A stretch of DNA of 64,000 bases. Source: Camelus dromedarius. Its lineage: Eukaryota. A program made the position numbers and the translations under genes. The stretch covers positions 1,364,001 to 1,428,000 of the forward strand of contig NC_087455.1 of the NCBI RefSeq assembly GCF_036321535.1, read 5' to 3'. Under the pieces are notes generated by a model, which made no database searches, was not told the origin of the DNA, and saw only the letters and a list, made by a program, of their open reading frames with translations. Shown here piece by piece: positions 2,460 to 64,000 of this stretch (positions within the stretch are counted from its first letter, which is position 1; every line of letters starts with the position of its first letter).

Positions 2460-4872
2460 ATGACGGTCCTCCTTGCTTTGCTCCTGATCATGGGCATGCC
2501 GTGGGTGGAGACCAACATTACCGTGTCTGGAAGACAAAGTAAGTGCGCGGCCTTCGGCCTCCTGGGCTGGGAGGAGGAGGTGGGCTGGAATGCAGACACA
2601 GGGGTGGCCTCCATATCTGGATGCTGCCATGGCCCCACGTGGGTCTGGGCAATTGCAGAGCAGAGGACTCAGTGGGCATTAGGAGGGTGGCTGGCTGACT
2701 TGGACACCCAGTGTGGGGGGCCTCTGGATGTGGGCCCCCCAAGGGCGGGCAGGGATGGCTGGTTTATTCCCCAGCACCCAGCTTGCCCCACAATGGCCCT
2801 GCCTTCTTGGCAGAGGCCAAGCCTGACCCCACCCACGTGGGCCTTCTGGGGCTGTCTCTAAGAACAGGAAAGCTGCTGGAGTGTCACCTGCTTCTCCCCC
2901 GGGGAGCGAGTCCTGCCCCAGCGTAGACCCACCAGCGGGCTGCCGCTCTTGGGTCAGGGTGGACGCAAGGCCTCGGGGACGAGGAGTGGGGTGGGCCAGG
3001 AAGCAGGTGGAAAGGACACCTTTGGGAGCAGACTGCACAGCCCTGGAGTCCCTTTTTCTAGAGTACCTGGAGGGGAGATATGTCAGTGTTGTGTGTGGAC
3101 GTGGGGCGCAGTGTTCCCGTGCCAGGCTGTGAGTGTGTGTTTCTGGTGTGAGAGTGCAGGAATGTGTTGGTGCAGGGTGTCTGGGCGTGGGGGTGTGACC
3201 GAGACATGGCCTGTGTGTGGACTGGGGGAGGCCAGGAGAGGAGAGGAGCAGAGGAACTCAGGGGATGGGGCAGGCTGTGGGGAGCGGGGAGCTGGAGGGA
3301 CCCGCTGGCGGTGCTCGCTTGGAGGAAGAGAGGGCTGTTGTCCGTCTGAACGTACTAGAGGGCTGCAGGGTCCACTCTCCTTATGCTTCGATGCCCCGTT
3401 TCAGGACGGCTGAGGTGTCACGTGTGTGAGATAGAGAACAGTTTCGACTGCCAACAGCCAATGGACTGTGACCAGGGCGTTGAGTACTGCTCCACTGCTG
3501 CCGTGAGTGAGTATGAGCCCCGCCCCTGACGGGGCTCCCCAGGCAGCTCAGCAGAGCACTCAGGGCTTGGGGTCTGTCTGTGTCGTCAACAGAGAACAGC
3601 TGACATAAAAGTGAGCCTCTGTTTACACTGGAAGAACAGGGTCCTGTGAAGCCAGGCGTGCAGGCAGGGGCTGGAGGTGACCCCGCTGATGCGAGTGCCA
3701 GCAGAGCCCGAGTCCGGCCACAGCCCCGACCCCTGGCCAGCGCGCAGCAGCGACGGGCAGGGAGAAGTTGGTGGAGATTCCTTTTCATTCACTTCTGAGG
3801 GAAAAATTAAGCTTTACTGACTTCAGATGGCCGGAGGATAGCTTTACGAGAGATGTACATAATAAGGGGCGTGGGCTCCACATGTTCTGAAAAGAGTGGG
3901 CGCGCTTTAAAATGTCTGGAGACCGCCACTCTGTCATCTGTCATTCACCTGAGGATTCTGGCCTCATGAAGAACTCTCTCCCAAGCGGGTGTCTGAAGGC
4001 TCCGCCTGACCCAGCCGCGGCCTTGCTGGGGCCCGAGAAGCAAGCTCCCTCTGGGGGCTCCATGTCCCGGGAAGCGTGCGGGGTGCTGGGTTGGCTGAGG
4101 CGCCAGTCTCCCTGCAGCCTCACGTCACGTAACTCAGTATGGAGCCGCGATGGCCTGGGGACTCGTGCAACAGGGTGAAGTCCTGGGCCTGGCCCGGCTC
4201 CCAGCGCTGGGCCGTGGCCAGGATGGCCAGGAGTCCCTTGCTCCTGTGCAACTGTCTGTGGTCCCAAAGGCCTGAGCCACCCTCGTTTGAGAACTTGAGG
4301 CTTAAAGAGCCAGAGACCCTCAGGCCCAGGTTCCCGAGCCCGGAGACTGGCCAGGGCTGGGGTATCTGGTGCCACACTGCACGCCAGCCATCCCCCACTG
4401 CCCCCCAGAAGCAACTCTGAACGCAAAGGCTTGACTCTCCTCCCAACTCCTGGCCAGGTGCCCTCTTTGAGTGGGGCCTGAGAGTGCTCCCGGCAGGGGC
4501 AGGGCTGGACAGATTTTAGACGGAAACTGCTCATGTTGCCGCCTCCAACTCATGTGCTTCCTCTGTCTCTATTTCCCATCAGGAGTTTTTCCACGGTTCT
4601 TCTATGTTTCAAAGCAATGCATGAAGTACTGTGCGTTAAGCTTTCAGGGGATGCGGACAGCCAAGTCGTTTGTGCTCGTAAAGCCCACGCCCTTCCTGTT
4701 CATCTCGTGCTGCAGGGAGAACCTGTGCAACGTTGAGAAACCAGTCATCGAGGAAAACTCAGAAGATAAATACCGAGAGGTGGGAGGGGCCCCAGACGGG
4801 CAGGGCAGCAGCGCCAGGCTGGTGACTCTCGTGGCACTGGCCTCGGCGCTCCTGGGCCTCAGGCTGCCGTGA
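2460..4872 (+). CDS. LY6K: Lymphocyte antigen 6K, GPI-anchored LU protein, 156 aa; exons 2460-2538, 3405-3506, 4583-4872
   Basis: Spliced: MTVLLALLLIMGMPWVETNITVSGRQRRLRCHVCEIENSFDCQQPMDCDQGVEYCSTAAVRVFPRFFYVSKQCMKYCALSFQGMRTAKSFVLVKPTPFLFISCCRENLCNVEKPVIEENSEDKYREVGGAPDGQGSSARLVTLVALASALLGLRLP. 10 Cys, CC..LCN motif, hydrophobic tail. The FPRFF.V.KQC, C.....EN.F.C and P.PF motifs match human LY6K. Canonical donors (gtaagt, gtgagt); total 471 nt. Confidence 0.9.
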
Positions 4873-21100: not shown

Positions 21101-22699
21101 GTGGTGAGGTAACAGGGGGATTTTCTAGAATTGTGACCTTCTGGTTCCAGCCAGTCTGGGGTCGAGTGCTTATGGTCGGCATATAGTCGTCACCCTTCAC
21201 TGGGTGGGGTTCTTAGTTTCTGCAGAACAACTTGAAGGTATGTGTCAGACTGTTACCTGTGTCCCTTCAGGAGGAACCAGGAGCCATGTGACTCTTGTCC
21301 TAATTGTCCTGCTTGAGTCTGCCCTTTGGAACTCAGGGAAGCCAGCGAAGAAGCAGGGGCATGGAGAGGCTTGTGCCTGGCAGGGCCTGGCAGGGCCCCG
21401 CAGGGTCCTGCTGGTTCCACCAGAATCGCCCCTGTTACACTCTACCCACGGCAACACAACTCCTTATGTAGATTACTGAGCAGAGCAGCAACAAATGACC
21501 GTATCGCTGCCGGGTGAGAGGTAGAGACATGGCCCTGTCCGGTGTCCCGCCTGGCACTGCCCCAGGGGGTATGTCCCCAGAGGTGGCCTCCCAGGGGGAG
21601 ACTGCTGCCCACCCTAGAGAGTTAGCCTTTGCTCGAGGCCCTGCAGTTGGTTGCAATGGCCTCTGGTCAAGGAACAGCCTTGATCCACTGGGAGCTGGTG
21701 GCTCTGTCTCTCTGCTTGGCCAAGGCCTAAGAGGGCCATGTCCTTCTTGGCCCTGGTGGCTCTGATGCCCCGCTCCCTAAACACTGCTCCTAACTATGCT
21801 GTCTAAAAGCGGACGTTTATGCAGCCCGCTCTCAGCGCTACTCATGACTGAACCCACTTAGCCCCCAAGCAATTGCAGAAGTTGGTCCTCTTTTTATCCA
21901 CATTCTCCAGACGAGGAAATTGAAGCACCTGAGGATGACCCTCCAGCCCTCTCTGATTTCTGGGCCAGCTGCAAATAGGAGTCCCTTTGTCAGGGTCACA
22001 GTTTCAAGCACGTTCTGAGTAGGAAGGGTTAAGGGGAGCAAGGCATGCTGAGCCAGCACTCCTGGGCTCTGAGCCGCCTGCACTGTTGTCTCAGGAGCCT
22101 GGCTCAGCCGCCCCAGTGTCCACAGAGGAGGCCGTCCTGCCCAAGAGCCCTGCTCACCCTGAGGGGCTGCTGTCAGCCCCGCCTCCCTCTCCCAGCCCCT
22201 TCCCTTCCCTTCCGGATGTGAAGCTCAAAAGGCAACTGAGGCCGCCCTGGGCCTTTTAATCCTCTAGCCACCACTTCCTCAGGCTTTTCAGTCCCAGAAA
22301 GGGACCGGGGCGAGCAGGGCCTGGCATTTCCTCTGGGCCCTGAAACCCAGAGCGGAGAAGAGCTCCCACACATCTGCCAGAGAGAAGGGGAAGAGGGGCT
22401 GGGCGTGGGGCCTCACCATCCCAAGGGCTGGCTGGCTGGGTGGCCACAGAGCACGCCGCCCATGGGCACTCGCCCCTCTCTCTACAGCCAATCCCGGCGG
22501 CATCCTGGTCATGAAGTCCTGTGCCCCGACGTGCCCCAACAGCACTGTGTCCTCCGATGGCCGGGCGCTGTCCGTCTACTGCTGTCAGGGCAGCCAGTGC
22601 AACCGTAGCGCGGCCATGGGCCTGACGGGCAGCCACGGGGCCCTGTGGATCAGCGCCTTGGCCAGCCTGTTGTGGGTGCTGCTCCAGGCTGCCTGGTGA
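18200..22699 (+). pseudogene. Ly6/uPAR-family gene with disabling lesions, probable Ly6g6g (mouse D730001G18Rik) orthologue; exons 18200-18251, 19649-19723, 22488-22699
   Basis: Conceptual splice: (I)RPLLVFLLLAALCTVL-VRALRGHVCCGQCSPTDRFCVITRA-TNPGGILVMKSCAPTCPNSTVSSDGRALSVYCCQGSQCNRSAAMGLTGSHGALWISALASLLWVLLQAAW*. Start is ATT; LRCHVC is LRGHVC; exon 2 is 75 nt versus 99-120 nt in neighbours; donor reads ctgagt. Exon 3 has 5 Cys and a GPI tail. Position between LY6K and LY6D matches recalled mouse gene order. Confidence 0.8.
20883..21419 (-). mobile_element. ERV1-class solo LTR in intron 2 of the Ly6 pseudogene
   Basis: tggttcccaaaccgaact...gcagcaaagccaatctactgacaccggcttgtggtgaaggaa...catttattt...ctgattggttgg...agggccccgcagggtcctgctggttcca; TG..CA ends, reverse poly(A)-like and CCAAT motifs. 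Confidence 0.7.
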
Positions 22700-30900: not shown

Positions 30901-32254
30901 ATGAAGACAGCGCTGCTGTTTCTTGTTGCCTTGGCTGTGGCTGCTGGTCCAGGTGAGGGGCTGGGCGGGGGCTGGGTGGGCCAGACCCTGGAAGCCTGGA
31001 GTGTTCACCTCTAGGCTGGGAGAACCCTGGCATTGTGAGGGCTGGAAAAAAGTGAACCCTGCATCTTGACTTAGAGGGGTCACAGACTTACAATATTTCA
31101 GGATCAGTGAATCTTAGAATCAACCCAGAGAATCTGATGTCTGAGTTGTCTTGAGATGCCTCTCCCAGGGGAAAGACAGATACCTGGGACCCAGTCCCTG
31201 ACCCTTCCAGGCCCCAGGGCCCTCCCAGGCCAGCCCTTCCTCCCGCAGGCTCAGCGTGGCCAAGCTGACAGCTCCCAGGGCCCCAGCTCAGCCTCAGCTC
31301 CTCACCATGGGTGGCCTGTCCAGAGACTGCCCTTGGGGTGGGGACAGCAGCCAGGTCCTGCAAGCAGAAGTGCCCGAGCTCTCTGACCGCCCTGGAGAAG
31401 GGCCTCCAGCACAGCCCATGGCAGCCGCCTCCTCACTGTTCCTCCAGAAACGCCCGGCACCGGACACCTCCTCTAGGTGGGGCCCCAGCTCCAGCAGACA
31501 GGGGCTGTCACCTCCCGCTGCCTGAGGCTGTGTGCAAGACATGAGCTCTGGAAGAGCCCAGGGGCCTCAGAGGGGACTGGCCTAGGGCAAGGGTGGCAGA
31601 GGGCTCTGTCCAGGAGGGGCCTTTTCAGGCAGTGGACCCAGGTCTCCCTGTCTCCCTGGGAGGCCTCCCTGGGGCCCGTTGAAACCCTGACACCCTCACC
31701 CTCAGCCCAGGCTCTCCGCTGCCACGTGTGCTCCAGCTCCTCCAACTGTAAGAAACCTCAGACCTGCCCAGCCAGCGCGAACTTCTGCAGGACCATGACC
31801 AACGGTGAGTGACTGGGGGGAAGGGAGACGGGCCCCTGCAGGACACCCTAGACCTCTGTCCAGGTGTCCCAGGGGGCCATCCCTGGGGAGATCGGTGAGA
31901 GATCTCGGCGATGGTTCAGTCAAGGTGGCGAAGGAAGTTGGGAGCTGGGACTTGCGGGGCGGGGCTGGGAGGGGCTGGGGTGGAGGCGGTGCCTGTCCTG
32001 ACCACGCCCACCCGCTCTCAGTGGAGACTCTGTCTGGGAACCTGGTGGAGAAGGACTGCGTGGAGTCCTGCACGCCCACGAACAGCATGCAGGGCCAGGT
32101 CAGCAGCGGCACGGCGGCCACCCTGTGCTGCCGAGGCGACCTGTGCAACGATAATCTGCAGAGCGCCGCGCCTGCCCGCGCCCTGCTCACCAGCGCCACC
32201 CTCGGCCTGGCGCTGGCCCTTTTCCTCCTCATCATCTCGGCCCCCAGCCTGTGA
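30901..32254 (+). CDS. LY6D: Lymphocyte antigen 6D (E48), GPI-anchored, 127 aa; exons 30901-30952, 31706-31804, 32022-32254
   Basis: MKTALLFLVALAVAAGPAQALRCHVCSSSSNCKKPQTCPASANFCRTMTNVETLSGNLVEKDCVESCTPTNSMQGQVSSGTAATLCCRGDLCNDNLQSAAPARALLTSATLGLALALFLLIISAPSL; closely matches human LY6D (GNLVKKDC, GQVSSG, APSL end); canonical splice sites. Confidence 0.97.
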
Positions 32255-42854: not shown

Positions 42855-43617
42855 ATGGCACCCCTGCTCACCCTGCTCCTGGTGGCCCTGGCTGGCCTGC
42901 CTCTGGGTAAGATGGATGGAAGACGAGGAGTGGACCAACCCCCTTTGGGGGCAGGCAGGCTGCAAGTGGGGAGGGAGGCCAGAATGCCTGGGGGCCACCT
43001 CTCCTTCCAGCTGTTCTGCTCTGGGGAGGGTGATGGAACCAAGGGGCTGATGGGCTAGAGGCAGGGCCTCTCCCTGTTCTGTGACCCCATCCCCTGGCCC
43101 CAAGCCCAGGCTCTGGACTGCCACGTGTGCGCCTACAATGGAGAGAACTGCTTCAACCCCACGCGCTGCCCGGCCATGGTCACCTACTGTATGACCACAC
43201 GCACTTGTGAGTCAGTGGGGTGCTCTGCACAGCCCTCCCTGGGGAGCATAGGGGCCTGCTTCTCCTGCCCTGCGAAGTGTGGGGGAGGCTGAGGAGGGAG
43301 GCTCCCATCTGCCCCAGGATCCCCTGGGAGCCCCCGGCTGAGGGGAACCTGGCCTAATGGCCCTGCGAGCTGGGGTTGGCCCCTCTCAGGGTCCTGACCT
43401 TCCCCTCTACCCCTCTGAAGACTACACCCCGACTAGGATGAAGGTGAGCAAGTCATGTGTGACCAGCTGCTTTGAAACCGTGTACGATGGCTACTCCAAG
43501 CACGCATCCACCACGGCCTGCTGCCAGTACGACCTCTGTAACGGCGCCAGCCTCGCTGCCCCCATGACCCTGGCCCTGGCTCTTATTCTCCTGGCCACCT
43601 TCTGGGGTCTGCTCTGA
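42855..43617 (+). CDS. LYNX1: Ly6/neurotoxin 1, GPI-anchored nAChR modulator, 116 aa; exons 42855-42906, 43105-43206, 43421-43617
   Basis: [116 protein letters not shown]; near-identical to human LYNX1. Confidence 0.98.
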
Positions 43618-48857: not shown

Positions 48858-51668
48858 ATGAGGCTGCTCCTTGGGCTCCTGTTGGCAGCTGCCTTGAGCC
48901 TGGAGCTAGGTAAGTCGGGGTGGGGGTGGGGGGGCGGGACCACTTTCCTTCCAGATGTCTTACTGGGCTGTGACTCCCACCTTGGGGGAGCCCACTTCCT
49001 GTCCCCTCCCCCCTCTCCTGGGGCACCAGACTTCCCCCTCCACCAGCCCCTCCGCCTGTGACACCAGGCACTTCCTGGACCTGCAGGGAAGTCATCTGAG
49101 CCTCACACTGTCCTTGTCCCTGCAAGGGCTGCCCACTTCTCAGGGCTCTGCCCTCCCCCCACTACCTCCACAGGCCTCCCCACTCCAGCAGTGACCCCCC
49201 ACACCTGAGTTTGAAGGCCTGCCCTGTTTCCTGGGTCCTCCCTCTCCTGGCTCCCTCCTACCTCCCCTGTAGGTGGGATCCTGGCCTCTCCCCTCTCCAC
49301 TCCAGGCTTCCTTATAGGGGCAGCTTCCCCACTGCCATCACTTCAGTCTTCCCTGGCTATGCCCACATCCGTGGATGCTGGCTGCATCTGACCCAGCTTC
49401 CAGCCCTTCGCTCAGAGGTTGGCCTGAGGGCATCCTCCCAGATGTCCGAATAGAGCCAGCAGGGCTCCCCTGATCCAACCCCCACCAGACCCTGCTCTCC
49501 CAGCCCTCACCTGTTTCCCCTTCTGGGTCAGCACTCCCTCACCAGCCACATGGCCCTAAATGAGATGGACAGAGGAAACGTCTGGACGTCCCTGGCCCAG
49601 GCACAGCGCTCCCCCTCCCAGTCTCTGGGATCTGTCCACTGTCTCTACCCGCAGGGACCCTCCTAGGGGCCTCTGACTGTGGGAAAGGGGCCAGGCCTCA
49701 CCACTGACCCCTGAGAACTGCCCCTAGGTCATCAGGGTGGATGTACAAGGAGGGGATGCCTGCAGGAGTCTGAGCTCAAGGCAGGGAAAGCCCTGGTCAC
49801 CACCAGGGCTGGGTCACAAGGACTGGGTGGCCTCCTCTCCGTCCCTGGGCTCAGCCCAGTTCCAGGGGATCACAGAAGCCTGCCAGGTGCTATGTCCACG
49901 GAAACATCACTGACCAGAGACCCTGCCCTGCCTGAGCAGCTGGCCTCTGAAGTCCCATCTGCTCTCACACACAGCAGGCCTCAGGCTGGGGTCACTGCCT
50001 TTCCAGTTGGAGAATGGGGGGTCAGAGCCCTGTGGCCCTCTTTCAGGGACCCCATAAGCCTCATCGTTGCTGGTGTCCTCTCCCTGTCACCCAGGGGCAG
50101 CACAGCCTTCCCTGGGCCTCACACTGGCCCAGGCTTAGTTAACCAAGCAGCACCCAGAGTGGGAGGTGAGCTGCCTGCGCGGGGCAGGACAGGAGCCTGG
50201 TCTGCTGCCCCCAAAGCCACCGCCTCTGTCCATCCTCCGTCCTCCGTCCTTCCGTCTCTCCCTCCCTCCCTCCCTTCCTTCCACTAAGCTCCCCTGAGCC
50301 CTGCTAGGCACAGAGGAGGGGTGCATTGTGGTGGATGGTCTGGGGGCACCTTCACATCTGGGGCAGTGGGGGTGGGGAGGGAACCCTGAGACCAGGTCAC
50401 GTGGGAGCAAGGACAAATCGCCAGCACCTCACAGTGGGCAGGTCAAAGGGGCAACATCAACTCTGCCCTAGAAGCCCAGGAGGCCTTCTTAGAAGAGGCG
50501 GCATCTGAGCCGGGGCCCGTTTCACCTGGAAGGGCAGGACAGCAGAGGCAAAGCAGGGAGGCATCTGGGAGGGTGAGCAGGGAGGAAGGGAGGCAGGAAC
50601 TGGTTATCTCACTGGGACACCCCTGGGGCACAGATATCTCAGTTTTTCCGGTGACACCACCCTGCCCGTCCATGAGGGTCCCTGCCATCTGCCACCCCAA
50701 TCGGCACTGCCAGAGTCTGCGAAGTGCTTACGCAGCTTATCAAAGCACCATCGGGTTTGACGTGAGGGTGGCTTCAGTCATCTTTTTGGGGCCTTGTGAC
50801 ATCTGCTGCCCACATCGGTGGGGGGCGGGGGATGGGACACCGACCAGCCGACTCCAGCCGCAGCGCTGACCCCAGCAGGGCGGTGGCCCGTTACACCCTG
50901 AGCGTGATCACTTGTATCCTGCAATGACCAGTCCCACAGGGTAACAGAGCAGAGGGCCCTGGGCTGAGGCTTGGTACCTGGTGACCTTCTCCCCAGCCCT
51001 CTGTCTTGGAGGTCTTGAGGGGTGAGGCACCCCAAGATGAAGGACAGGGGCCCCCGAGAATGGGAATTGGTGCTGGGTGAGAAGAAAGAGTGCCATCATG
51101 CGGGAGGTACCCCCACCTGCGTCCCTGTCTGTGTGTCCGTCCATCCTTCCCTCTGCCTGCAACTGTAGCCCAGGCCTTGCAGTGCCACCAGTGCAAGGGC
51201 TTCGGAGGATGCGCCCAGAAGTCCAAATGCCCATCCAGGTCCAGCCACTGCATCAGTATCGCCACCCGTGAGTAGGGGATGAGGAGCAGGCCGGCCACGC
51301 CCTCCTCAGTGAGTGGGGAGACCCGGGCTCAGAGGGGGTGGAGACTGAGCCAGCTGCTGGGCAAGTCAGTCCCAGGGCAGGGAAAGCCTCACCCAGCAGC
51401 TAAAGCGGGAGGCCGGGTCCACCCGGGGTGGAGGAGGGAGCTGACCCACGTCTCGGTGGTAGGTGGGGCAGTGGGTACGGGCAGCTCAGATCCTTGGGTT
51501 GTCTGCAGGATTTCTCTCCTGTCCACCCCAGGGGCCCCCAGCAACTTCCCGGACCTGCCTCTTGTCACCAAGATGTGCTACAGAGGCTGCCCTGACATCA
51601 ACACCCTGGGCCTGGGCCCCTACGTGTCCATCGTCTGCTGCCAGGCCAGCCTCTGCAACCGTGACTGA
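48858..51668 (+). CDS. SLURP2: Secreted Ly6/uPAR-related protein 2, 95 aa; exons 48858-48909, 51169-51267, 51532-51668
   Basis: [95 protein letters not shown]; matches human SLURP2 ([35 protein letters not shown]); no GPI tail. Confidence 0.95.
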
Positions 51669-56170: not shown

Positions 56171-58157
56171 ATGCGGGGGACATGGCTGGCGCTGCTGGCG
56201 CTGGTGCTGGCTGCTGGAGGCGGTGAGCTCGCTGAGGGGTGCAGGCACCTGGTAGGGGACAGGGGGAGAAGGAGCGCAGGGAGGATGGGGGGAGGCGAGT
56301 GAGAAGGGAGAGAGGCGGTGGGGTGGGCCAGGGACAAGGGGCCCCAGGGCATTCAGGTCACCCACAGCCCAGGTGTGAGTGTGGAGGAGCACGGCAGGAA
56401 GGGCTGAGACTGGCCAGGTGGTTGGTGGCCAGGACCCTGGGTGCCGGCTGGGGAGCCGCCCTTCATCGAGGGCGTGGGCACCAGGAAGGGCCTTCTGCTG
56501 GGAAGGGCAGGCAGGGTCAGGATCCTGCTCCCTGGGTCCAGGGCTGAGGTGCTGAGGCCGGTCTCAGGAGGTGCCTCGGGGACACCAGGGAGGTGCCGAG
56601 GGCAGGGGGAGCAGGAGATGGGGAAGAAGGAAGCAAACCCAGACACATCGGGGGACTTAGGGTCTGAGAGAACACCTGGGGGAGGTGTCCCAGGCCCCTG
56701 GGGACCCACGCCCGATCAGAAAAGGGGCCGGGTGGAGCAGGCCCCAGCCAGACGGTTCTGCCCATTTCCTAGAGGGGGAAACTGAGGTCATCCCGAGAGA
56801 CAGGCAGCACTCAGCGGGGGCCGAGTGGCCGCGGCCTCGCTGTGCGCCAGGGGCTGCTCGGGCTGCCATGATGGGGCTGGGGCACCAGAGCTGGAGGAAA
56901 GAGGACCAGCCTGCTCCCCCTGCCCCTGCCAGCCTGCGCCCTGACCCGCCTGGGTCCCACCGGGTGTGGCTCTTCTCCCTCCCTTGTTACGCTGGCACCA
57001 TGTACCTCCCTTGCCTGATCCCTGATCCTCACGGCAGCCCTTTGAGTCCTCCACTTTGCTGACGCGGACCCCGAGGGGCTGGCCCGCCTCCCCACCCCTG
57101 CCAGGCCCCTCACCGCAGGGGCACCAGTGCCTCGGTCTCCCTGTGCACCCCCAGCACTTCCGAAGCTGCATCATCTCTCCCTTGGCCGTGGCGGGCACAC
57201 TCTGCCTCAGGGCGGGGGCCCCAGCTCACACGCAGCTCTTGAATCTTCCTGGAGTTCTGGCCGGTGGGCGACTGGACCCTGAGTGGCGTTGTCCCCCTCA
57301 ACCTGGGTCTCTGGGTCAGAGGGCTTGGGAGGGGCAGGGCCTGCCTGATCCACCCCTCATCTCTCCTTCCCCAGTGGGGGCCCTGCAGTGCTACACCTGC
57401 CACGAGCCCAGCAGCCTGTCCAGTTGTGTCACTGCCGTCACCTGCAACGCCAACGAAACCATGTGCAAGACCACACTCTACTCCCTGGAGATGGGTCAGT
57501 GGGGCTGGGGGGGGGGGTGCAGGGCTGGGGTCCCAGGGGCAGGGCTGCCTCGACCCAGTCGCTGCTGGCCAGCCCTGGCCCCCAGTGGGCAGCGAGCAGC
57601 CATCACCCTAGTCATTTCCAAAAAGGGCTTTGGGTCCAAGCAACCGGGACTCTCCCCCTCCCCCTTCTCTCCCTTCCCTCCCGTAACAGGGAAATCTTCA
57701 GTCTTGCTTGGGAGTCACTGGGAGGGAGGTGCCCCGTCCAGCAAGGCGTCCTGTGCAAGTCGCCGGGCACCCAGCGCACAGTAGGCGCTCAGCCTGCAGT
57801 GGTGGGAGGAGAGGGGGCTGGGTCACGGAGAGGCTGAGACCGGTGTGGCGGCCCCAGAGTGGGCGCTGTGCGAGGTGGCCGGGCTGGGGCTTGGAGGCCA
57901 TGGAGGACGTGGCCACAGGCCAGCCTGACACTGGTACCCCTGTGCCCCCAGTGTACCCCTTCCTGGGGGACTCCACAGTGACCAAGTCCTGTGCCAGCAA
58001 GTGCGTGCCCTCGGACGTGGACGGCATCGGCTTGACCCGGCCCGTGTCCTGCTGCAACACTGACCTGTGCAACATGGATGGGGCGCCTGTGCTGGGCAGC
58101 CCCTACGGCCTGGCCTTCACCCTCCTGCTCATCCCCCTCTGGAGCCTCGGCTTCTAG
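56171..58157 (+). CDS. LYPD2: LY6/PLAUR domain-containing 2, GPI-anchored, ~125 aa; exons 56171-56222, 57375-57494, 57952-58157
   Basis: [125 protein letters not shown]; matches human LYPD2 ([31 protein letters not shown]). The exon-1 donor position is inferred. Confidence 0.95.
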
Positions 58158-61508: not shown

Positions 61509-61557
61509 TCCCCATGGGAGGCCGGCAGAGGCCTCTCTCGCCTCCTGAGCACGAAGA

Positions 61558-62657
61558 ATGGCCTCTCCCAGGGCCCTGCCACCGCTGCTGCTGCTCGCTG
61601 CGCTCTTGGGTGCACACTCTGGTGAGTGCGGCAGGGGTGGCTGTGGAGGGGTCCTCGCCTGGCCCACCTCCTCAGTGGTGAGGGGGCGTCCGAGGGCTTT
61701 GAGTGGAAGCCCTCCTTAGGCCCACTGGGCTCACCTCCCTCACCCTAAAAGAGCCTCCTGGTCCTGAGCCTGGCTTCACCGGGGTGAAGGGGGCAGGGGT
61801 CACAGCCCGTTCTCCAGGCAGGAAAACTGAGGCTCGGGTAGAGAGATGCAGTGTTCAGGTCCACCGCCCCCAGCCCCAGGCTTGAAGGGTCTCAGCGAGG
61901 CGAGCCCTGTCTCCCGGGGAGGGACAGGGGACGCCCTCCAAGCAGACCTGTGGGGATGCCCCAGGGGAGGGCCACCCCCATCTCTTCTCCAGCCTCCTTC
62001 CTGCCTCCAGGACGGGTCTCAAAGTCAGGTGATGAGGGTCTGCCCCTACCCTTCACCCAGGTGAGGCCTTCAGGTGCTTCACGTGCAAGCAGCCCACGCC
62101 CATTTCTTTGTGCAAGAACATCACTCGCTGCAAGCCGGAGCACACGGCCTGCAAGACCACACTGGTGGCGGTGGAGTCAGGTGAGGCTGGGGGGTGTTGG
62201 GGGCGGGGGTCCAGCAGGCTGGCTCTGAAGGGCTGCCCAAGGGCTGCATCGGCCTCGGCTCTGGGCTTCCGTCCCAGGGCCACACCGCGGACCCCGGCAG
62301 GGCACTGGTGGGGCACGGAGGACTCCCCAGGCCTGCTGTTAGTTCAGCGGTCTCAAGGTGGCGTGGGAGGCGGTGGGAAGGTCAAGGTGAGGTGCATGGA
62401 GGCGGGGATGGCGCTGGGCAGTTGGGGGCTGGCTCTGACCCCTGCCCGCCCTGGCAGAGTTCCCCTTCGGCCAGAGCCCTGTGGTGACCCGCTCCTGCTC
62501 CAGCTCCTGCACGGCCACTGACCCGGACAGCTTTGGGGTCAGACACCCCGTCTTCTGCTGCTTCCGTGATCTCTGCAATTCTGTGGGGGCCGCCAGGCTC
62601 AGTGCCGGGGCCCTGGCCACTCTGGGGGCCACACTCCTCAGCCACCTCCTTCCCTGA
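61558..62657 (+). CDS. SLURP1: SLURP1 orthologue with C-terminal GPI-signal-like extension, 127 aa; exons 61558-61621, 62061-62180, 62458-62657
   Basis: MASPRALPPLLLLAALLGAHSGEAFRCFTCKQPTPISLCKNITRCKPEHTACKTTLVAVESEFPFGQSPVVTRSCSSSCTATDPDSFGVRHPVFCCFRDLCNSVGAARLSAGALATLGATLLSHLLP*; core matches human SLURP1 (RCKPE.TAC, QSPVVTRSCSSSC.ATDPDS, FCCFRDLCNS). Confidence 0.96.
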
Positions 62658-64000
62658 AGAGCCTGGCTCTGCCAGTGGCCACCACTGCTGGCACGCCTCC
62701 ATGGCCCAAGCTCCCTGGGCCTCAGGTTACCCGTGGGACCCTAGGGGAGCTTCCCAGGTGGGCCTGGGTCTTCCCAAGTACGTGGGAGGGGGTGTGGAGT
62801 GCTGCACCCACCAATCTCCATGGGCCTTAGTCTCCTCCTCTGACAATGGGCCTGTTACACCCTCGGCCCTGGGGACAGCTGAGATTCCACGAGATTGTGT
62901 GCACGGAATACTAAGGCCGCCCAGCTCCCCCAAGGCCCCCCGGGCTGCTGAGAGGTTCCCAGGGGCCAGCCTGCCAGCCGGAGGAGCAGCAAGTGTCCTC
63001 GGGGGCTGAGCACCCCCCAGGGCCCAGGGCCCTTGGGCCCCAGGAGAGCCCGCCTCAAGCTCCTGCTTCCCCCTCACATGGCTCCCAGCTGTCCCCGGGT
63101 GTGACCTGCTCCAGCCCCACTGTAGGCAGGCGGAGGCAGGAGCCTGAGTGACCCCAGGGGCGTTGATGCCCCTCTCCAGGCACAAGTTCCCACTGGGCCT
63201 TCTGGGCCGGGCACTTTCCAGATTCTATGTATGGCCAAACTTCCAGACAGCCCCACTGGACCCTGCATTTGGAGGCAAGAAGCCAGAGCTACGGCCTCCC
63301 CTCGGGGTCTGAGCAAGCCCAAGTCACTCCACCTCAGCTTCACCAGCAGAGCCACAGGGAGGGTGCCTTCGGGTCTCCGAGGCGGGAAGGGCAGATGGGA
63401 GAGGCTTGGCAGCTGCCCATCCCCCAGGAAGGCTGGTGGGCGGCCGGGGGCACCTGCAAGGCCTCCGCTCTGCTCAAGCGTGGCCAGCAGAGGGCGTGCG
63501 CCCCTCAGGCTCCTCCCAGGGGCAGCCAGGTCAGGGTCTCATACCCCAGACACCCAGAGATCGGCCACCAGGTCCTCTCCATCCCATCCTCTGCCCTGGC
63601 TCTCCCTGCCACCTGCCCAGGACTGAGACACGCCCCCATGGTATGTCCTCCAAACATAGACTGAGAGCCTCCTGTCCTCCTGTCCCCCTGCCCCCTCGGC
63701 TGGGGTGCATCTCCCTGAAGTGGACAGAGAAGTCCCCATGCCCCGGGGCACAGCCACACTCAGCCCAGACGCCCTTGAACATCTTGAACCACACTGATCG
63801 CCCCCCACACACATGGTGCCAAGCAGGGCAGACTACGCCCAGGCACCCCAAGCAGGGCTCCCCAGCCCCTGCCCTGCTCCAGGGTCCCAGCCAGCCACTC
63901 AGAACCACTGGCTGGACCTGCCTGGGCCTAGACCACCTGGGGGCACCATTTCCTGTCTGCAGTCCCATTTGTAACTTGTCCCGGCTGACAACGGTCAACT

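What the first reader, a model, noticed from the sequence alone, without database searches (positions are those of the whole stretch)
62574..62657. SLURP1 here is predicted to be GPI-anchored, not secreted
Seen: after the terminal CN the frame continues SVGAARLSAGALATLGATLLSHLLP*. This gives small-residue omega candidates (N, S or G), a polar spacer and a hydrophobic C-terminus, the same layout as the LYNX1, LY6D and LYPD2 tails in this window. An N-glycosylation sequon (N-I-T) is also present in loop I/II. Established: human SLURP1 ends CNSEL and is defined as a secreted alpha7-nAChR modulator (Mal de Meleda gene); recalled mouse ends shortly after CN too. Inference: in this lineage SLURP1 is a membrane-tethered, LYNX1-like modulator, and the secreted form may be a derived truncation. 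Other laurasiatherians may share the tail, so novelty may lie in the function rather than the sequence.
Basis: partly seen in the sequence, partly recalled or inferred. Interest (0 to 1): 0.75.

Follow-up and report, generated by a model that had tools for sequence, protein, structure and literature searches.

The report
Camel SLURP1 keeps ancestral GPI-type tail
The camel version of SLURP1, a skin and mucosa signalling protein known from human and mouse as a freely secreted factor, still carries an old, evolutionarily protected, greasy tail of the kind that normally tethers its relatives to the cell surface, so in camels and many other mammals it may be membrane-bound; this was not tested at the bench.

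Summary
A three-exon SLURP1 gene (61558-62657, +) gives a 127-aa product identical to the annotated Camelus protein. It reads 24 residues past the CNS where human and other anthropoid primates add only EL.

The tail is not a camel peculiarity. It has the same length (25 residues after the Asn) in camelids, ruminants, hippo, a seal, moles, shrews, beaver, kangaroo rat, squirrel and pika; pangolin has it too (Lys for the Asn), gundi has 22.

In nine of these species the tail is under purifying selection: omega 0.26-0.31, p about 1e-6 or lower against neutrality. Its hydrophobic character was never kept in 3000 neutral simulations.

A marsupial SLURP1 orthologue has a strongly hydrophobic GPI-type tail. 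Lemur and hamster carry the wrecked tail in their 3'UTR, so the short secreted forms are derived. By parsimony the tail was lost at least ten times.

The layout fits a GPI-attachment signal but is weak, at about the 18th percentile of Ly6-family tails and below LYNX1, LY6D and LYPD2 in this window. No GPI predictor or reads could be run.

I rate GPI anchoring, at least partial, at about 0.6. Published work already proposes a stop-gain origin of the SLURPs. I found no paper on widespread retention of the tail under selection.

The parts
61558..61621 (+). SLURP1 exon 1: start codon and hydrophobic N-terminal signal peptide (21 codons plus 1 nt)
   Evidence: GTGAGT donor at 61622.
62061..62180 (+). 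SLURP1 exon 2: first half of the LU (three-finger) domain, including the N41-I-T sequon at 62117-62125
   Evidence: (UPAR_LY6 and Toxin_TOLIP above Pfam cut-offs).
62458..62657 (+). SLURP1 exon 3: second half of the LU domain, the C-terminal tail and the TGA stop
62577..62588 (+). Candidate omega region N102-S103-V104-G105. S103 is the best omega candidate in camel (omega+2 = Gly). N102 is the only candidate common to nearly all orthologues.
   Evidence: Read from the sequence. Orthologue comparison. GPI signal rules taken from PMC10491789 and PMC2571997.
62589..62597 (+). Short spacer A106-A107-R108 holding the only charged residue of the tail
62598..62654 (+). Uncharged, weakly hydrophobic C-terminal stretch L109-P127, modelled as a helix at 109-123
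   Evidence: best 15-residue Kyte-Doolittle window 1.49. (helix 109-123, low-confidence model). (hydrophobicity kept against neutral expectation).
62655..62657 (+). TGA stop, at the homologous position in all nine tail-keeping species (TAG in Sorex); still visible as TGA in the lemur 3'UTR
62700..62745 (+). Conserved 3'UTR block about 45-90 nt after the stop, alignable in most of the eleven species, including the two with truncated proteins
   Evidence: MAFFT alignment. Not analysed further.

Best explanation
The window holds the camel orthologue of SLURP1. Its last exon encodes, after the LU domain's terminal Cys-Asn, a 25-residue C-terminal peptide. This peptide is the retained, weakened descendant of the GPI-attachment signal of the Ly6 ancestor.

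Most likely mechanism (inferred): the N-terminal signal peptide takes the preproprotein into the ER. The weakly hydrophobic C-terminal helix presents the small residues next to the last cysteine (omega at S103 or N102) to GPI transamidase. The propeptide is cut off and replaced by a GPI anchor. The three-finger domain then sits on the outer leaflet of epithelial cells as a LYNX1-like tethered modulator.

Because the signal is weak, a share may escape as soluble protein or be shed. Primates, myomorph rodents, hares, whales, most carnivores and others lost the tail independently and make the purely secreted form known from human and mouse.

Shown here: the tail is real, ancestral, of fixed length, and under purifying selection for an uncharged hydrophobic peptide. 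Inferred: that it is processed by GPI transamidase.
For: Gene model and identity to the annotated Camelus protein.

LU domain.

Distribution: a tail of exactly 25 residues after the Asn is found in Camelus, Vicugna, Cervus, Budorcas, Capra, Hippopotamus, Mirounga, Talpa, Galemys, Sorex (two species), Castor, Dipodomys, Callospermophilus and Ochotona. Ctenodactylus has 22. Smutsia has an equally long tail with Lys in place of the Asn.

Codon evidence from nine species: the stop is at the same place. Third-position differences are 0.42 against 0.28 and 0.19 at positions 1 and 2. Pooled NG86 dN/dS is 0.47 in frame, against 0.69 and 1.62 in the two false frames. GY codon model omega is 0.26 (F1X4) and 0.18 (F3X4), with LRT against omega=1 giving p=8e-9 and 5e-11. 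Without the N-S codons omega is 0.31 and 0.26, p=3e-6 and 3e-7. This is similar to the LU part of the same exon.

Neutral simulation: hydrophobicity was kept in all nine tips in 0 of 3000 runs. One or fewer charged residues at tail positions 8-22 occurred in 0.1% of runs.

Polarity: the lemur has TGA directly after CNS plus a 28-nt deletion, yet the old tail end and the old TGA remain. The hamster has a 4-nt deletion, a frameshift and a new TAG. Marsupial Dromiciops P0074 has eutherian SLURP1 proteins as its best non-marsupial BLASTP hits, at 44-55% identity, and carries a strongly hydrophobic 34-residue tail.

Layout against published GPI signal rules (PMC10491789; PMC2571997): small omega candidates, omega+2 Gly for S103, a propeptide longer than 16 residues, and no charge after R108.

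Hydrophobicity total is 20.0 with my re-implementation of the published measure.

AF2 puts a helix at 109-123 (low confidence).
Against: The tail is the least hydrophobic Ly6 tail in the window. Its best 9-residue Kyte-Doolittle window is 1.89, against 2.58-3.40 for the paralogues. It lies near the 18th percentile of 91 other Ly6-family tails.

The hydrophobic stretch is only 15-17 residues and holds Thr, Gly, Ser and His.

The omega+2 Gly is replaced by Gln, Glu or Lys in seal, squirrel and gundi. That leaves N102 with Val at omega+2 as the only shared candidate.

Repeated loss of the tail shows it is dispensable in many lineages.

No GPI predictor could be run. No reads could be laid. The AF2 model is poor (mean pLDDT 49.8). 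All literature read treats SLURP1 as secreted, though only on human and mouse data.
Confidence: 0.6

Rival explanations
1. The tail is a functional, selected C-terminal peptide but not a GPI signal. It might be a propeptide that slows ER exit or is clipped before secretion, or a weak membrane- or partner-binding helix kept on the secreted protein. Camel SLURP1 would then still be soluble.
For: Hydrophobicity is at the low end of the family. The omega+2 position is not conserved as a small residue. Several tail positions are conserved at the level of sequence rather than only of chemistry: the L-A-x-L-G core and the basic residue (H or R) three to four residues from the end. The tail has been lost many times without loss of the gene.
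Against: Selection acts on exactly the features a GPI signal needs: no charge, hydrophobic to the end, fixed distance from the last cysteine. The gene family's default use of such a tail is GPI attachment. The marsupial orthologue has a canonical strong tail. An uncleaved hydrophobic C-terminus on a secretory protein is usually a liability (established knowledge, not tested here).
Confidence: 0.32
2. The tail is a neutral read-through into former 3'UTR, conserved only because the DNA is conserved for RNA-level reasons. It would have no protein-level function.
For: The 3'UTR just downstream also contains conserved blocks. Absence of stops alone is not significant: 59% of neutral simulations keep all nine tips open.
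Against: Omega is 0.18-0.31 with LRT p between 3e-6 and 5e-11. Differences peak at third positions and the false frames give higher ratios. Neutral simulations never keep the hydrophobicity. There are no indels across nine species.
Confidence: 0.04
3. The tail is an assembly or annotation artefact, or transcripts use another 3' end so that the tail is never made.
For: No AATAAA or ATTAAA lies in the 1.3 kb after the stop.
Against: The same 127-aa protein is recorded in three Camelus species under four accessions, and in alpaca with one change elsewhere. Independent genomes from several mammalian orders have the same structure. RNA-seq contig runs from two studies hold 69-83% of sampled words of 61540-62900; splicing in those runs was not examined.
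Confidence: 0.04

Closest known systems
[quoted passage not shown]
   Same: It is the orthologue. It has the same three-exon structure and the same place in the cluster after LYPD2. The LU domain has ten cysteines and is 65-70% identical to primate and rodent proteins.
   Different: Hominine and macaque proteins end CNSEL, and muroid proteins end 10 residues after the Asn following a frameshift. The camel protein continues for 25 residues with an uncharged hydrophobic peptide. 'Secreted' has been shown only for the short forms.
LYNX1, the GPI-anchored nAChR modulator (exon 3 at 43342-43617 in this window)
   Same: A single LU domain followed directly after the Cys-Asn by a 24-residue tail of small residues and then a hydrophobic stretch. 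This is the proposed functional analogue: a tethered modulator acting on the cell that makes it.
   Different: The LYNX1 tail is much more hydrophobic: best 9-residue window 3.21 against 1.89, total 33.6 against 20.0. LYNX1 is a paralogue, not an orthologue.
CD59, a Ly6-family GPI protein with a low-hydrophobicity attachment signal
   Same: PMC9520029 lists its signal as by far the least hydrophobic of five tested proteins, yet it is efficiently anchored. By my calculation its total (21.8, sequence from memory) is close to camel SLURP1 (20.0).
   Different: CD59 has a stronger hydrophobic core (best 9-residue window 2.68). My number does not reproduce the published 17.7, so the comparison is approximate.
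Published model that the secreted SLURPs arose from GPI-anchored prototoxins by a stop codon ahead of GPI-coding sequence (Miwa et al. 2019, PMC6502960, citing Adermann et al. 1999)
   Same: The same polarity of change, from anchored to secreted by stop gain.
   Different: That model rests on human genomic sequence. Here the open, selected tail is shown in living species of several mammalian orders, and the losses are shown to be many and independent. I found no paper stating this.

Membership tests
Ly6/uPAR (LU, three-finger) domain family | LU domain with the 10-cysteine pattern ending in CCxxxxCN | tested here: met
   Pfam UPAR_LY6 and Toxin_TOLIP score above their curated cut-offs on exons 2 and 3 separately. 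The mature part has ten Cys and ends CCFRDLCN.
SLURP1 orthologue group | Best matches are annotated SLURP1 proteins, and the gene lies next to LYPD2 in the LY6D-LYNX1/SLURP2-LYPD2-SLURP1 cluster | tested here: met
   The product is identical to the Camelus protein named SLURP1 and 65-72% identical to other mammalian SLURP1 proteins. The order of Ly6 last exons in the window is LY6D 31799-32254, LYNX1 43342-43617, SLURP2-like 51276-51668, LYPD2 57687-58157, SLURP1 62439-62657.
Secreted (non-anchored) Ly6 proteins, as SLURP1 is defined in the literature | No C-terminal hydrophobic extension after the LU domain | tested here: not met
   25 residues follow the Asn. The last 19 are uncharged and hydrophobic on balance.
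GPI-anchored proteins | N-terminal ER signal peptide | tested here: inconclusive
   The hydrophobic N-terminus (Leu/Ala run in residues 8-17) aligns with the signal peptides of its orthologues. No signal-peptide predictor was available.
GPI-anchored proteins | Omega site with a small residue, omega+1 not Pro, omega+2 small (PMC10491789, PMC2571997) | tested here: inconclusive
   Camel: S103-V-G fits, G105-A-A fits, and N102-S-V has Val at omega+2. Across orthologues position 105 is Gln, Glu or Lys in some species, so no single ideal site is conserved.
GPI-anchored proteins | Spacer followed by a hydrophobic stretch running to the C-terminus; propeptide longer than about 16 residues | tested here: inconclusive
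   The propeptide is 22-25 residues depending on the omega site chosen. There is no charge after R108. The hydrophobic part is 15-17 residues with a best 15-residue window of 1.49. That is inside the hydrophobic class of family tails but only at about the 18th percentile. This is shorter and weaker than the 15-20 hydrophobic residues after an 8-12 residue spacer quoted in PMC10491789.
GPI-anchored proteins | Positive call by a trained predictor (NetGPI, PredGPI, big-PI) | not testable with these tools
   There is no network access and no local copy. FT-GPI needs TMpred matrices that are not at hand.
GPI-anchored proteins | Release by PI-PLC, dependence on GPI transamidase, and lipid on the C-terminal residue | not testable with these tools
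   Bench experiments only.

The most novel reading that the evidence does not exclude
SLURP1, the textbook secreted Ly6 protein, is ancestrally a GPI-anchored, cell-autonomous receptor modulator with a deliberately weak attachment signal that gives both tethered and soluble protein, and it remains so in many living mammalian orders, including livestock. The purely secreted, hormone-like form studied in human and mouse would be one of ten or more independent recent conversions. That would make this gene a natural replicate series for the anchored-to-secreted switch also proposed for the origin of snake three-finger toxins.
Probability: 0.5. Interest if true: 0.7.

Novelty: new variant of a known kind. 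Interest (0 to 1): 0.5.

Why it matters
SLURP1 biology has been worked out only in human and mouse: Mal de Meleda, alpha7 nicotinic receptor antagonism, and scavenging of urokinase. By this analysis both species carry derived, tail-less forms.

If the tail directs GPI anchoring, the protein acts on the cell that makes it in many other mammals, as LYNX1 does, rather than as a diffusible factor. That would change how results from pig, cattle, sheep or dog skin and mucosa models should be read.

It would also give a well-dated series of independent anchored-to-secreted switches within one gene. The same step has been proposed for the origin of snake three-finger toxins (PMC10421932, PMC6502960).

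If the tail is not a GPI signal, a selected hydrophobic C-terminal peptide on a secreted three-finger protein still needs a function.

The test is cheap: predictors, then a tagged construct with and without PI-PLC.

Tried and rejected
There is therefore no read-level check of the stop, the splicing or expression level. After that call I sent no window letters spanning 62471-62508, and no camelid protein, to any search tool. The profile search used alignment A2, which has no camelid rows. The camel protein was used only in local scripts, alignments and the structure prediction.

Structure. AF2 on alignment A3 gave a poor model (mean pLDDT 49.8). The tail helix is only weak support, and no fold search was made.

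Tree. A maximum-likelihood tree of LU domains was unresolved, with 18 of 29 forks open. Orthology of the marsupial protein rests on best BLASTP hits and the source's own name.

Missing DNA. The state in Afrotheria therefore rests on proteins only. All five afrotherian models lack the 25-residue hydrophobic tail: three are short (tenrec ends NVVGARR, which looks like the start of the tail) and the two elephant-shrew models have unrelated endings.

Hydrophobicity calibration. The table of GPI-signal hydrophobicity for more than 130 human proteins (PMC9520029) is not held. Galian et al. 2012 and Adermann et al. 1999 are not held. My re-implementation gives 21.8 for CD59 against the published 17.7, so the scale is only roughly matched.

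Predictors. FT-GPI could not be re-implemented.

Rejected readings. A transmembrane anchor is rejected as too short and too weakly hydrophobic, with no cytosolic part. A camel-specific novelty is rejected. The argument that mere openness of the frame is evidence is rejected, because 59% of neutral simulations keep it open.

No human DNA was fetched. The 3'UTR-remnant test was done on a lemur and a hamster instead.

Full report
**1. What is at the coordinates**

The stretch 62574-62657 is the end of the last exon of a three-exon gene on the + strand.
- Exons are 61558-61621, 62061-62180 and 62458-62657, with GT/AG at every junction.
- The spliced CDS is 384 nt and gives 127 residues: a hydrophobic N-terminus, ten cysteines and one N-glycosylation sequon (N41-I-T, 62117-62125).
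- Exons 2 and 3 each score above the Pfam cut-offs for UPAR_LY6 and Toxin_TOLIP.
- After the terminal Cys101-Asn102 the frame runs on through S V G A A R L S A G A L A T L G A T L L S H L L P to a TGA at 62655.

The product is letter-for-letter P0014. [quoted passage not shown] The alpaca protein differs at one residue, outside the tail. Several independent assemblies agreeing makes a sequencing slip unlikely.

All that remains from the run search is that RNA-seq contig sets from two studies of reproductive-tract samples hold 69-83% of the sampled words of 61540-62900. That shows the locus is present in RNA libraries, not that it is spliced as modelled.

**2. The tail is not a camel feature**

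Three protein searches and a profile search returned SLURP1 proteins from about fifty mammals. I cut all of them after the last cysteine.

A tail of exactly 25 residues after the Asn is present in:
- Camelus and Vicugna;
- the ruminants Cervus, Budorcas and Capra, plus unnamed contig proteins P0001, P0002 and P0039-P0048 that carry the ruminant-type tail;
- Hippopotamus;
- the seal Mirounga;
- the moles Talpa and Galemys;
- two Sorex shrews;
- Castor, Dipodomys and Callospermophilus;
- the pika Ochotona.

The gundi Ctenodactylus has 22 residues. The pangolin Smutsia has an equally long tail with Lys in place of the Asn.

The pattern is roughly N-S-V-G-x-A-R-L-x-A-G-A-L-A-x-L-G-A-x-L-L-x-H-L-L-P.

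Short or wrecked tails occur in:
- primates (CNS in lemurs and loris; CNSEL in apes and macaque);
- treeshrew and colugo (frameshifts);
- myomorph rodents (10 residues);
- Octodon (7) and Lepus (7);
- toothed whales (17);
- feliform carnivores (21, with extra Arg or Lys);
- bear (15), fox (12), mustelids (frameshift) and fur seal (2);
- all five afrotherians: three are short (3-6 residues) and the two elephant-shrew models have unrelated endings.

On the accepted mammal tree, with seal, hippo, pika and gundi keeping the tail beside relatives that lost it, this needs at least ten independent losses. That count is an inference by parsimony, and some automated gene models may be wrong.

**3. Is the tail selected?**

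I fetched genomic DNA for eight tail-keeping species, plus a lemur and a hamster. I extracted exon 3 from each.

In the nine tail-keeping species, camel included, the 26 tail codons align without any gap. The stop is at the same place in all.
- Differences fall at third codon positions: 0.42, against 0.28 and 0.19 at positions 1 and 2.
- Pooled Nei-Gojobori dN/dS is 0.47 in the real frame, and 0.69 and 1.62 in the two false frames. The LU part of the same exon gives 0.40.
- A Goldman-Yang codon model on the fixed species tree gives omega 0.26 (F1X4) or 0.18 (F3X4) for the tail. The likelihood-ratio tests against omega = 1 give p = 8e-9 and 5e-11.
- Without the N-S codons omega is 0.31 or 0.26, with p = 3e-6 and 3e-7.

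I then simulated neutral evolution of the tail along a tree whose branch lengths came from third positions (total length 3.66).
- The frame stayed open in all nine tips in 59% of 3000 runs. Openness alone therefore proves nothing.
- Hydrophobicity as high as observed in all tips never occurred (0 of 3000).
- One or fewer charged residues at tail positions 8-22 occurred in 0.1% of runs.

The tail is a translated peptide. Selection keeps it uncharged and hydrophobic. The species were chosen for having a full-length tail, which conditions on length but not on composition.

**4. Which state is ancestral?**

I aligned the DNA after the last cysteine.
- The lemur Propithecus has TCG TGA directly after the Asn codon and a 28-nt deletion. 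The end of the old tail and the old TGA are still recognisable in its 3'UTR.
- The hamster has a 4-nt deletion that shifts the frame to a new TAG after ten residues. The old TGA has become TGG.

Both short forms are therefore derived from the long one.

Outside placentals, the profile search found P0074 from the marsupial Dromiciops, named SLURP1-like. Apart from the Tasmanian devil sequence P0076 (89%), its best BLASTP hits are eutherian SLURP1 proteins at 44-55% identity, ahead of LYPD2-like proteins. Its tail has 34 residues and a strongly hydrophobic end, in the top tenth of family tails. A maximum-likelihood tree of the short domain was unresolved, so this orthology rests on best hits and the source's name.

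Taken together, the common ancestor had a hydrophobic C-terminal signal, eutherians weakened it, and many lineages later lost it.

**5. Is it a GPI signal?**

The rules I could cite are these (PMC10491789; PMC2571997):
- a small omega residue;
- any non-Pro residue at omega+1;
- a small omega+2 residue;
- a spacer;
- a hydrophobic stretch running to the C-terminus;
- a propeptide longer than about 16 residues.

Camel offers three candidate sites: S103-V-G, G105-A-A and N102-S-V. The spacer holds the only charge (R108). It is followed by 15-19 uncharged residues.

Against this, the stretch is weak.
- The best 9-residue Kyte-Doolittle window is 1.89, against 3.21 for LYNX1, 3.40 for LY6D and 2.58 for LYPD2 from this same window.
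- Among 91 other Ly6-family tails from the profile search, the camel tail lies near the 18th percentile for peak hydrophobicity and the 32nd for the mean of the last 20 residues. It is above the clearly non-hydrophobic tails.
- The Gly at omega+2 of S103 is Gln, Glu or Lys in seal, squirrel and gundi.

In its favour, low hydrophobicity does not exclude anchoring. CD59 has by far the lowest score of the five proteins tabulated in PMC9520029 and is efficiently anchored. By my re-implementation its total is 21.8 against 20.0 for camel SLURP1.

AF2 modelled residues 109-123 as a helix, but the whole model is poor (mean pLDDT 49.8).

No trained GPI predictor was available. I put the chance of GPI anchoring, at least of a fraction of the protein, at about 0.6.

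The main rival, at about 0.3, is a selected hydrophobic peptide with another role on a still-secreted protein. Neutral read-through and artefact are each below 0.05.

**6. What is already known**

Reviews and the recent three-finger-toxin genomics paper treat SLURP1 as a secreted protein lacking the membrane-anchoring region (PMC4839075, PMC6600238, PMC10421932).

Miwa et al. 2019 (PMC6502960) state, citing Adermann et al. 1999, that in the SLURP genes a stop codon precedes genomic sequence that could encode a GPI consensus. They conclude that the anchored forms came first.

Seven literature searches found no statement of the following (one search was a methods search on GPI-signal hydrophobicity):
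- that the tail is still open in many living orders;
- that it is under purifying selection for hydrophobicity;
- that it was lost many times independently;
- that camel, ruminant, mole, shrew, beaver or pika SLURP1 may therefore be membrane-tethered.

The proteins themselves are in public databases under the name 'secreted'.

**7. Verdict**

- The feature is real, old and functional.
- Its mechanism (GPI anchoring through a weak signal) is the best-supported reading but is unproven.
- I class it as a new variant of a known kind, of moderate interest. A predictor run and a PI-PLC experiment would settle it.

Noticed in passing
window 4471-4872, 22268-22699, 31799-32254, 43342-43617, 51276-51668, 57687-58157: Six further Ly6 last exons lie on the + strand. 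They are a GML-like one, an extra Ly6 exon with a hydrophobic tail (the 'seventh Ly6 gene' of note s1-196079), LY6D, LYNX1, a SLURP2-like exon ending CNRD then stop (no tail), and LYPD2. All except the SLURP2-like exon carry strongly hydrophobic tails.
   Followed up: partly
window 62700-62745; L001-L010 downstream of the SLURP1 stop: A 3'UTR block about 45-90 nt after the stop (core close to GAGCTCxCTGGGCCTCAGG) can be aligned in most of the eleven species, including lemur and hamster with truncated proteins. It may be a regulatory element of the transcript.
   Followed up: no
P0079, P0109, P0220 (Sus scrofa): Pig SLURP1-like proteins have Gly in place of a conserved LU-domain cysteine (SSSG for SSSC) and Ser in place of the terminal Asn. 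One model ends after CSPGRQ. Another keeps a full hydrophobic tail. This may be a decaying or strongly divergent gene in pigs.
   Followed up: no
P0055 (Mustela erminea), P0052, P0060: Mustelid models of 180-185 aa, one of them named 'LYPD2-like isoform X1', look like LYPD2-SLURP1 read-through or extended models with a frameshifted tail. They recall the human LYPD2-SLURP1 read-through transcript mentioned in PMC10421932.
   Followed up: no
window 62117-62125: The N-I-T sequon in loop I is the consensus of mammalian SLURP1 (CKNITxC). The hominine and macaque proteins instead have R/K-T-I-T at that spot. Conversely, the camel has lost the N-Q-S sequon that most species carry at the start of exon 3 (FPFGQS).
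   Followed up: partly
window 62658-64000: No AATAAA or ATTAAA lies in the 1.3 kb after the SLURP1 stop, so the polyadenylation site is not obvious from the sequence.
   Followed up: no
whole window: The window contains 465 N. They were left untouched.
   Followed up: no
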